NCBI RefSeq assembly: GCF_006345805.1
Contig: NC_043003.1
Coordinates: 71,176,001 to 71,240,000, forward strand
From: Octopus sinensis
Taxonomy: Eukaryota
Direction of reading: 5' to 3'
Length of the DNA stretch: 64,000 bases
Shown: positions 248 to 64,000 of the stretch, one piece after another
Numbering within the stretch: position 1 is the first letter of the stretch
Layout of the letters: each line of letters begins with the position of its first letter
Translations under genes and position numbers: made by a program
Notes under the pieces: generated by a model
Database searches by the model: none
The model's input: only the letters and a program-made list of their open reading frames with translations
Told to the model about the DNA's origin: nothing

Positions 248-421
248 CTACAAAAGCTCCTGATGTATTGGTCAGTCAACTGAAAAGTGCTACAAGACAA
301 AAAGATAAGGCAGCTCTAGCAAAACTTATCATTGAATGCGAAGAAGCAGGTTATCCAGAGATTGCCAATGATCTTTGGAAAGCTAGAGAAACTCTTCATA
401 GTATTTGTGGAGAATATGGAG
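248..421 (+). CDS. Repeat exon 1 (class A, A1 position)
   Basis: cag|..G|gttag, 174 nt; [58 protein letters not shown]. Confidence 0.88.

Positions 422-64000: not shown

What the first reader, a model, noticed from the sequence alone, without database searches (positions are those of the whole stretch)
248..64000. Unrecognised giant beads-on-a-string protein built by one-exon-per-module duplication
Seen: 79 phase 1-1 exons, each encoding one ~58-aa module, splice into about 4,560 codons with no start or stop in view, so the protein is larger still. I do not recognise the module as any named repeat family. Inference: a very long modular structural or scaffold protein, conceptually like titin, nebulin or mucin repeat regions but with its own module. 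ORF finders break it into many false small ORFs, so it is likely mis-annotated or unannotated.
Basis: partly seen in the sequence, partly recalled or inferred. Interest (0 to 1): 0.9.

Follow-up and report, generated by a model that had tools for sequence, protein, structure and literature searches.

The report
Octopus KY-like giant repeat gene
This 64-kb stretch is the middle of a single octopus gene: 79 near-uniform exons, each coding one small three-helix bead, belonging to a relative of the cytoskeletal protein KY that is already in the databases but whose model uses only 8 of these exons.

Summary
The + strand carries 78 complete module exons plus a 79th cut by the window end. They are typically 174 nt, AG|…G|GT, phase 1-1, about 4,544 codons. 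Two details were missed. Exons 28-79 are 13 tandem copies, over 99% identical, of a 2.23-kb four-exon cassette. Fourteen exons carry 1-2 bp frame-breaking indels, mostly in short homopolymers, probably nanopore assembly errors.

The gene is not unknown. Spliced exons 13-20 match residues 998-1465 of Octopus vulgaris CAI9725887.1 (2,069 aa) at 467 of 468 positions. That protein has an N-terminal transglutaminase-like core and three Ig-like_KY domains, the KY/hillarin/LTD-1 family. Its model skips window exons 1-12 and 21-79. O. bimaculoides has the locus split into fragments.

The 58-aa module has no Pfam family or solved relative. AlphaFold models it as a three-helix bundle followed by a disordered Gly-rich linker. 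Abalone "ltd-1-like" proteins carry two to three copies, and similar repeats occur in protist proteins.

Most likely this is the expanded flexible spacer of a non-catalytic cytoskeletal scaffold. How many exons reach the mRNA is untested. It is a new variant of a known kind, of moderate interest.

The parts
248..421 (+). exon 1 (type a module), 174 nt, phase 1-1
908..1080 (+). exon 2 (type b), 173 nt. It is frame-broken: one G appears to be missing from a GG just before the invariant Ala-Arg codons.
   Evidence: indel position read by eye
1584..8474 (+). Exons 3-12, all intact: 1584-1757, 2140-2313, 3653-3826, 4060-4233, 4465-4638, 5007-5180, 5543-5716, 6027-6212 (186 nt), 7718-7888 (171 nt), 8301-8474. 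The O. vulgaris gene model does not use them.
16615..26347 (+). Exons 13-20: 16615-16794, 17074-17247, 18918-19094, 20284-20460, 23552-23725, 24252-24425, 25477-25650, 26174-26347. Spliced together they equal residues 998-1465 of O. vulgaris CAI9725887.1 (467/468 identical).
29743..34283 (+). Exons 21-27, all intact: 29743-29916, 30247-30420, 30890-31063, 31535-31708, 32380-32553, 32868-33041, 34110-34283. The O. vulgaris gene model does not use them.
35579..36102 (+). Intron segment 86% identical to the last 552 nt of the cassette's D-to-A intron. It is an older copy that marks the left edge of the young array.
36103..38333 (+). Array unit 1 (2,231 bp), reference cassette: exon A 36103-36279 (177 nt, type b1), B 36481-36654 (a), C 36967-37140 (b2), D 37336-37509 (a). 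All intact.
38334..40562 (+). Array unit 2: A 38334-38510, B 38712-38885, C 39198-39371 (one amino-acid change). D starts at 39567 and is broken by a 1-bp deletion at 39622.
40563..42776 (+). Array unit 3: A 40563-40739, B 40941-41114, C 41427-41600, D 41796-41969. All intact.
42777..45225 (+). Array unit 4 (2,449 bp): A 42777-42953 and B 43155-43328 are intact. C 43641-43817 and D 44014-44188 are broken by small indels. The intron holds a 204-bp tandem duplication at 44805-45213.
45226..47451 (+). Array unit 5: A 45226-45401, B 45603-45775 and C 46088-46260 are each broken by a 1-bp deletion. D 46455-46628 is intact.
47452..49679 (+). Array unit 6: A 47452-47628, B 47830-48003 and C 48316-48489 are intact. 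D 48684-48856 is broken by a 1-bp deletion.
49680..51910 (+). Array unit 7: A 49680-49855 is broken. B ends at 50229 and is broken by a 1-bp deletion at 50061. C 50544-50717 and D 50912-51085 are intact.
51911..54129 (+). Array unit 8: A 51911-52087, B 52289-52462, C 52774-52947, D 53142-53315. All intact.
54130..56362 (+). Array unit 9: A 54130-54304 is broken by a 2-bp deletion. B 54505-54678, C 54991-55164 and D 55360-55533 are intact.
56363..58264 (+). Array unit 10 (1,902 bp, with an intronic deletion of about 330 bp): A 56363-56539, B 56741-56914, C 57227-57400, D 57594-57767. All intact.
58265..60487 (+). Array unit 11: A 58265-58440 is broken, B 58639-58812 is intact, C 59124-59296 is broken, and D, from 59490, is broken by a 1-bp deletion at 59620.
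60488..62721 (+). Array unit 12: A 60488-60664, B 60866-61039, C 61352-61525, D 61721-61894. All intact.
62722..64000 (+). Array unit 13, cut by the window end: A 62722-62898, B 63100-63273 and C 63586-63759 are intact. D begins at 63955 and is the 79th exon, incomplete.

Best explanation
The window is an internal 64-kb piece of one protein-coding gene of Octopus vulgaris or a sibling species. The gene is a member of the KY / hillarin / LTD-1 family.

The full protein starts with a transglutaminase-like core and three Ig-like_KY domains, followed by a Lys/Glu-rich stretch. It ends in a conserved C-terminal domain that abalone ltd-1-like proteins share. The window encodes the region in between.

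That region is a chain of 58-aa modules, one per phase 1-1 exon. Each module is modelled as a small three-helix bundle followed by a Gly-rich, probably flexible, linker. The array grew by duplication of exon cassettes. An old alternation of two module types, and of four-module super-repeats, is visible in exons 1-27. A very recent or concertedly evolving 13-fold amplification of one 2.23-kb four-exon cassette makes up exons 28-79.

The following is inferred, not shown. The array acts as a long, flexible, length-adjustable spacer or tether between the two terminal domains of a non-catalytic cytoskeleton-associated scaffold. Because every exon is symmetric (phase 1-1), cassettes can be added, lost or skipped without breaking the frame. 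Both copy number and isoform length can therefore vary. The 14 frame-breaking 1-2 bp indels are most likely consensus errors of a nanopore assembly in a repeat that short reads cannot polish.
For: Exon array:
- 78 complete and 1 partial exon on the + strand only, all with AG/GT and phase 1-1.
- The donor is uniformly AG|GT, with T at +3 in 23 of 30 exons.

Coding constraint:
- The median dN/dS between same-type paralogous exons is 0.29, and it is below 1 in all 65 pairs.

Identity of the gene:
- Spliced exons 13-20 equal residues 998-1465 of O. vulgaris CAI9725887.1, with 467/468 identical.
- That protein has Transglut_core (25.8 bits, cut-off 23) and Ig-like_KY (215.9 bits, 3 stretches).
- Haliotis ltd-1-like XP_067667803.1 has the same architecture in compact form, with 2-3 modules. 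Its C-terminus is homologous to the octopus one (E = 6e-8).

Module structure:
- AlphaFold2 on four modules gave mean pLDDT 79.6, with three helices per module. pLDDT fell below 50 at two of the three inter-module linkers (54-61, 114-119), while the C-to-D linker stayed above 80.

Repeat hierarchy:
- Mean identity by lag is 0.38 (odd lags), 0.45 (lag 2) and 0.50-0.52 (lags 4, 8, 12).

Tandem array:
- Each of the 13 units has 0-22 substitutions against the consensus.
- Most exonic indels are 1-bp deletions in GG or AA runs, and they cluster in units 4, 5 and 11.
- The O. vulgaris reference was assembled from ONT R9.4.1 reads with 10x/Illumina data (PMC10700109).

Family function from the literature:
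- D-hillarin is at the cleavage furrow and linked to septin Pnut. LTD-1 localises in an actin-like pattern (PMC3718969).
- KY deficiency mislocalises filamin C (PMC6078408 abstract).
Against: - The only gene model that crosses the window uses 8 of the 79 exons. That pipeline drew on Iso-Seq data, so most exons may rarely or never be included.
- 14 exons are frame-broken as assembled. If the indels are real, including those exons would truncate the protein.
- No transcript or protein near-identical to the array modules was found in the 5.8-billion-protein collection.
- The copy number of a tandem array that is over 99% identical and longer than 28 kb cannot be trusted without reads that span it.
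- The spacer/tether function is inferred from modelled structure and family context only.
- dS between paralogous exons is near saturation (median 1.7), so the dN/dS value is rough.
Confidence: 0.75

Rival explanations
1. The real protein is about 2,000 aa, as annotated. Most of the window's exons, and especially the near-identical 13-unit cassette array, are young duplicated pseudo-exons that the spliceosome skips. The frameshifts are genuine early decay, or the array is inflated by mis-assembly.
For: - The O. vulgaris model built with Iso-Seq support uses only exons 13-20.
- 13 of the 51 array exons are frame-broken.
- No near-identical expressed sequence was found.
- The donors carry a non-consensus T at +3, which could favour skipping.
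Against: - Exons 1-12 and 21-27 are old and diverged (about 40-50% identity). All are intact except exon 2, with dN/dS near 0.3. That is not expected of unused exons.
- The O. bimaculoides model A0A0L8GL38 splices at least 23 modules in a row.
- The indels are of the homopolymer type typical of nanopore consensus errors. They cluster in units that also carry excess intronic differences.
- Evidence-combining gene predictors avoid frame-broken exons and multi-mapping repeats, which would explain the skipping.
Confidence: 0.2
2. One reading: a wholly unrecognised, unannotated giant protein of a new kind, unrelated to any described family.
For: The module itself has no Pfam family and no solved relative by sequence. 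The four-module AlphaFold model found no significant fold match in the PDB.
Against: - Exons 13-20 lie inside an annotated protein with transglutaminase-like and Ig-like_KY domains.
- Abalone ltd-1-like proteins have the same modules in the same position.
- O. bimaculoides RefSeq already names the 5' part 'kyphoscoliosis peptidase-like, partial'.
Confidence: 0.04
3. The array is non-coding satellite or transposon-derived repeat DNA that merely resembles exons.
For: The 2.23-kb units are tandem and over 99% identical, including their introns.
Against: - 64 copies keep open frames flanked by canonical splice signals in one phase.
- All hits are on one strand.
- Protein-level conservation extends to O. 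bimaculoides, other cephalopods and abalone.
- The only transposase-like fragment lies in an intron.
Confidence: 0.01

Closest known systems
KY / hillarin / LTD-1 family (transglutaminase-like core plus Ig-like_KY domains). Nearest compact relative: Haliotis 'lim and transglutaminase domain protein ltd-1-like' XP_067667803.1.
   Same: The octopus protein that contains window exons 13-20 has the same N-terminal Transglut_core and Ig-like_KY domains. The same helical modules follow those domains, and the C-terminal domain is homologous. Family members studied so far are cytoskeleton-associated and thought to be non-catalytic (PMC3718969).
   Different: Abalone has 2-3 modules, whereas the octopus gene has at least 79 in this window alone, with more on both sides. 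I did not find the module in the vertebrate or nematode members, and I did not examine those members directly. A weak alignment suggests the catalytic Cys and His are replaced.
Giant muscle proteins built by exon-cassette duplication: titin and nebulin, including nebulin's triplicated 8-exon block and titin's triplicated 9-exon block (from my own knowledge, not tested here).
   Same: Each has one module per symmetric exon, hierarchical super-repeats, and near-identical tandem exon cassettes. These cassettes are hard to assemble and annotate, may vary in copy number, and allow isoform length to be tuned by exon skipping.
   Different: The module here is an all-helical 58-aa bundle, not an Ig/FN3 domain or a 35-aa nebulin repeat. 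There are 13 cassette copies rather than 3. There is no sequence relationship.
Spectrin repeat
   Same: Both are three-helix bundles strung in long tandem arrays in a cytoskeletal protein.
   Different: Spectrin repeats are about 106 aa and are joined by a continuous helix (from my own knowledge). Here the modules are 58 aa and are separated by Gly-rich linkers with low model confidence. There is no Pfam spectrin hit.
Uncurated helical repeats of protist proteins, for example the Rhodelphis marinus myosin EP00736_P004893, a Polykrikos protein and a RUN-domain protein
   Same: They share the motif L-x2-A-x4-D-x3-L-x2-A-I-x2-[AC]-E-x2-G-…-A-[RK]-x2-L. Whole-protein E-values against the octopus module profile range from 1e-11 to 1e-23.
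   Different: The period is about 47-52 aa with no Gly linker. Individual repeats score only 5-25 bits. They sit in quite different architectures (myosin head, RUN). Common ancestry is plausible but not proven.

Membership tests
KY / hillarin / LTD-1 | Transglutaminase-like core domain (Pfam PF01841) | tested here: met
   P0153 (O. vulgaris CAI9725887.1) residues 93-202 score 25.8 bits against a cut-off of 23. The domain lies outside the window. It is linked to the window through exons 13-20.
KY / hillarin / LTD-1 | KY-type Ig-like domains (Pfam PF23265) | tested here: met
   P0153 scores 215.9 bits in 3 stretches. P0111 and P0142 give the same result.
KY / hillarin / LTD-1 | The window's exons belong to the same transcript as those domains. 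| tested here: met
   This holds at the level of an annotated gene model only. Spliced exons 13-20 match P0153 residues 998-1465 at 467/468. I could not examine RNA reads.
KY / hillarin / LTD-1 | State of the Cys-His-Asp catalytic triad (active enzyme or pseudo-enzyme) | tested here: inconclusive
   A weak alignment to the transglutaminase-like chain 9crn_A (E = 0.31) places Asn where that chain has its Cys and its His. I read the alignment by eye.
Any Pfam-A repeat or domain family (for the 58-aa module) | A match at or above the gathering score that covers the module | tested here: not met
   None of 30 modules scanned singly matched a shared family. A six-module concatenate gave only a 24-residue match to DUF2939 and chance-level hits.
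Spectrin repeat | A three-helix repeat of about 106 aa that matches PF00435 | tested here: not met
   There is no hit. The module length is 58 aa.
Titin/obscurin-type modular proteins | Ig or FN3 beta-sandwich modules | tested here: not met
   The model is all-helical, and the modules have no Ig or FN3 Pfam hits.
Mucin-type repeat region | Pro/Thr/Ser-rich, unstructured tandem repeats | tested here: not met
   S+T+P is about 14-15%, while L, K, D, E and A dominate. The modules are confidently modelled as helical.
Exon-shuffled modular genes (general class) | One module per exon, with both flanking introns in the same phase | tested here: met
   All 64 intact exons have lengths divisible by 3 and are in phase 1-1.

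The most novel reading that the evidence does not exclude
All of the at least 79 window exons, plus the modules known to lie upstream and downstream, are spliced into a cytoplasmic KY-family protein of more than 6,000-7,000 aa. Its length would be set by a lineage-specific, copy-number-variable four-exon cassette array. The 58-aa bead would be the founding animal example of an ancient, widespread eukaryotic three-helix repeat that no domain database yet describes.
Probability: 0.3. Interest if true: 0.6.

Novelty: new variant of a known kind. Interest (0 to 1): 0.42.

Why it matters
The locus shows that a family known from small proteins of 600-800 aa (KY, hillarin, LTD-1) has in octopus become a giant by inflation of an uncurated helical module.

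It offers three things:
- a clean new domain definition for Pfam or InterPro;
- a concrete example of a cephalopod gene that current annotations truncate (O. vulgaris) or shatter (O. bimaculoides);
- a natural case of very recent 13-fold exon-cassette amplification, comparable to the triplicated blocks of nebulin and titin.

It also serves as a warning. Near-identical exon arrays in nanopore assemblies carry frame-breaking errors that push gene predictors to skip real exons.

Tried and rejected
- **Pfam and PDB for the module.** Pfam on concatenated and single modules gave no family; the DUF2939 hit covers only 24 residues. PDB sequence searches with a protein and with the module profile found only de novo designed helical proteins at E of 0.006 or worse.
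- **Foldseek.** The four-module model against the PDB gave nothing at E ≤ 0.001 and TM ≤ 0.24. This is expected, because the relative orientation of the modules is arbitrary.
- **C-terminal domain.** By eye it looks like a dynein-stalk microtubule-binding domain. Pfam and PDB sequence searches gave nothing. The AlphaFold model had pLDDT 48.9 and was unusable, so I ran no fold search on it. The idea remains an untested lead.
- **Spliced RNA evidence.** Two further word-index searches returned no near-identical sequences. The two-module ORFs P0004, P0166 and P0167 turned out to be genomic, either two modules in one exon or in-frame read-through of a short intron. Only L003 looks mRNA-derived, and it comes from another cephalopod.
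- **Proteomics.** One squid-skin proteomics entry for the O. bimaculoides fragment A0A0L8GLC5 rests on a single peptide (PMC7024357). That is too weak to count as expression evidence.
- **Rfam.** A scan of the window found nothing.

Full report
**1. The observation**

The window is AT-rich (28-38% GC) and full of microsatellites, so it is a eukaryotic sequence. I built a profile from ten hand-picked modules and searched it against all stop-free segments in six frames. It hit 88 segments on the + strand, which merge into 78 loci, nearly all with E between 1e-15 and 1e-32. The 16 minus-strand hits all had E above 1.

Each locus is bounded by an AG acceptor and a G|GT donor. The intron falls after the first base of a codon on both sides, which is phase 1-1.
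- 64 exons are intact: 50 of 174 nt, 11 of 177 nt, and one each of 171, 180 and 186 nt.
- A 79th exon begins at 63955 and is cut by the window end.
- Counting the broken copies at their expected length gives 4,544 codons plus the partial exon.
- The donor is uniformly AG|GT. The +3 base is T in 23 of 30 diverged exons (GTTAG), which is an atypical base at that position.

**2.

*Broken exons.* Fourteen exons are frame-broken by 1-2 bp indels: exon 2 and 13 array copies.

*A recent tandem array.* The window has two very different halves.
- Exons 1-27 (248-34283) are old paralogues, 36-50% identical on average. Their introns range from 231 to 8,140 nt.
- Exons 28-79 (36103-64000) are 13 tandem copies of one 2.23-kb cassette of four exons (A-D). 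Each unit differs from the consensus by only 0-22 substitutions, introns included.
- The array runs off the window. Its left edge is marked by an older, 86%-identical copy of the cassette intron at 35579-36102.

*Periodicity.* Module identity is higher at even lags than at odd lags, and highest at multiples of four: 0.50-0.52 against 0.45 and 0.37 for exons 12-31. The array is therefore built from an ancient b1-a-b2-a super-repeat, and the young cassette is exactly one such super-repeat.

**3. Are the broken exons real?**

Most exonic indels in the array are single-base deletions in GG or AA runs. They cluster in units 4, 5 and 11, and units 4 and 5 also carry the most differences overall. Exon 2 likewise appears to lack one G of a GG just before the invariant Ala-Arg codons; I read that position by eye.

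The O. vulgaris reference genome was assembled from ONT R9.4.1 reads together with 10x Genomics Chromium (Illumina) reads (PMC10700109). Short reads cannot be placed uniquely in a repeat that is over 99% identical. I therefore infer that most of these frameshifts are consensus errors. I could not test this.

For the same reason the unit count of 13 is provisional.

**4. Coding constraint**

For 65 same-type pairs of 174-nt exons from exons 1-31, the median dN/dS is 0.29, and it is below 1 in every pair. dS is near saturation at a median of 1.7, so the value is rough. The direction is nonetheless clear: the diverged exons have evolved under protein-level constraint. That argues against their being unused.

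**5. Identity of the gene**

A word-index search with exons 16-31 found one protein, O. bimaculoides A0A0L8GL38. It is 1,563 aa, uncharacterised, and consists of about 23 modules followed by a C-terminal region.

An exhaustive profile search of 1.84 billion representative proteins found 238 proteins.
- Most are 44-137-aa ORFs covering one exon.
- P0111 has Transglut_core and Ig-like_KY domains, followed by one module.
- Its cluster contains O. bimaculoides XP_052825369.1, named 'kyphoscoliosis peptidase-like, partial', and O. vulgaris CAI9725887.1 / A0AA36F647 of 2,069 aa.

My spliced exons 13-20 (468 aa) match residues 998-1465 of the O. vulgaris protein at 467 of 468 positions. Three conclusions follow:
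- The window comes from O. vulgaris or a near-identical relative.
- The predicted splice junctions agree with an evidence-based annotation.
- The array lies inside a KY/hillarin/LTD-1-family gene.

The model has Transglut_core at 93-202, three Ig-like_KY stretches, and a Lys/Glu-rich segment. It continues with two modules that are not in the window, then exons 13-20, then six further modules and a C-terminal domain that lie beyond the window. It skips window exons 1-12 and 21-79 entirely.

In O. bimaculoides RefSeq the locus is split. The KY-like partial protein and 'uncharacterized LOC128248363' lie on the same 110.5-Mb chromosome.

**6. The module**

It has no Pfam-A family, whether scanned as a six-module concatenate or as 30 single modules. 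It has no relative of solved structure by sequence; only de novo designed helical proteins appear, at E of 0.006 or worse.

AlphaFold2 on one cassette, with an 11-row alignment, gave mean pLDDT 79.6. Each module forms three helices. pLDDT falls below 50 at two of the three inter-module linkers (residues 54-61 and 114-119), while the C-to-D linker stays above 80. pTM is 0.44, which fits independent beads. Foldseek against the PDB found nothing significant.

Conserved positions are L7, L11, A14, D19, L23, I27, E37-L38 and an invariant A45-R46.

The module occurs elsewhere.
- Haliotis 'ltd-1-like' proteins carry two clear copies and one weak copy between the Ig-like_KY domains and a C-terminal domain.
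- That C-terminal domain is homologous to the octopus C-terminus (E = 6e-8). The compact architecture is therefore ancestral in molluscs, and the octopus gene is an inflation of its middle.
- The same sequence motif recurs, without Gly linkers and with a period of about 50 aa, in protist proteins. Examples are a Rhodelphis myosin with 18 or more repeats, a Polykrikos protein and a RUN-domain protein.

I regard common ancestry with the protist repeats as plausible but unproven.

**7. Mechanism**

*Shown:* the exon array, its phase symmetry, its hierarchy, its membership of a KY-family gene model, and the helical-bead model.

*Inferred:* the array is a long, flexible spacer or tether between an N-terminal KY-type domain and a conserved C-terminal domain.

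The N-terminal domain is probably non-catalytic. A weak alignment to the transglutaminase-like chain 9crn_A puts Asn at both the Cys and the His positions.

Family members that have been studied are cytoskeleton-associated.
- D-hillarin lies at the cleavage furrow and is genetically linked to a septin, and LTD-1 localises in an actin-like pattern (PMC3718969).
- KY is linked to filamin C (PMC6078408 abstract).
- The best solved relative of the N-terminal region is FAP246 of the Chlamydomonas ciliary central apparatus (E = 4e-5).

Phase 1-1 symmetry means that unequal crossing-over can add or remove cassettes, and splicing can skip them, without breaking the frame. This would make protein length evolvable and possibly regulated.

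**8. Expression**

I found no direct RNA evidence for the window's exons beyond the O. vulgaris model.

Indirect evidence is limited.
- The O. bimaculoides model splices at least 23 modules consecutively.
- A 1,293-nt intronless contig from run SRR25158155 encodes about 2.5 modules joined to the C-terminal domain and a stop codon. It is 50% identical to octopus, so it probably comes from another cephalopod's mRNA.
- One peptide assigned to the O. bimaculoides fragment A0A0L8GLC5 was reported in a squid-skin proteome (PMC7024357). That is too weak to rely on.

The main rival therefore stays open. It holds that only a minority of exons are used and that the young array is skipped, decaying or mis-assembled. 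I give it about 0.2.

**9. Verdict**

The claim of an unrecognised protein is not: this is the under-annotated central repeat region of an octopus KY/hillarin/LTD-1-family gene.

What is new is the scale of the expansion, the 13-fold near-identical four-exon cassette, and a well-defined module that domain databases lack. I rate it a new variant of a known kind, with interest about 0.4.

Noticed in passing
window 6694-7182 (- strand), in the intron between exons 10 and 11: An open frame with a weak match to the mariner-type Transposase_1 DDE domain (22.9 bits, just under the 24-bit cut-off). It is probably a decayed mariner-like element.
   Followed up: partly
window donor sites of exons 1-31: The donors are almost uniformly AG|GTTAG, with T at +3 in 23 of 30 exons. 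That position is usually a purine. The pattern was probably inherited through exon duplication and might weaken the sites and favour exon skipping.
   Followed up: partly
window 44805-45213 and unit 10 (56363-58264): The otherwise uniform array has structural variants in the D-to-A intron. Unit 4 has a 204-bp tandem duplication. Unit 10 has a deletion of about 330 bp, with altered sequence just upstream of the next exon A.
   Followed up: no
window 8475-16614: An 8.1-kb intron, by far the longest, separates exon 12 from exon 13. Exon 13 is exactly where the annotated O. vulgaris model enters the window. The intron has no ORF of 110 aa or more and no further module.
   Followed up: partly
window 26001-28000: GC skew is strongly negative (-0.235) within the 3.4-kb intron between exons 20 and 21, unlike the rest of the window. 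This may be a strand-biased repeat element.
   Followed up: no
window 2447-2582, 3162-3458, 11109-11223, 29575-29662 and others: The introns hold many long microsatellites, including (AT)n of up to about 300 bp, (ACAT)n, (TAA)n and (AC)n.
   Followed up: no
L001 1113-1463 (Logan ERR12921336) and L002: In another organism, presumably a cephalopod, two modules lie in one uninterrupted exon. Intron loss between modules has therefore occurred in some lineages.
   Followed up: partly
P0153 residues ~1780-1950, P0001 C-terminus, P0142 residues ~690-770 (outside the window): The conserved C-terminal domain shared by the octopus and abalone proteins resembles, by eye, the microtubule-binding domain region of the dynein stalk. 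Sequence searches gave nothing and the AlphaFold model was too poor to test the idea.
   Followed up: partly
P0153 residues ~245-290 (outside the window): The segment just after the transglutaminase-like core matches FAP246 of the Chlamydomonas ciliary central-pair apparatus (PDB 7n6g/7sqc, E = 4e-5). This is a solved structural relative of the KY-type region.
   Followed up: no
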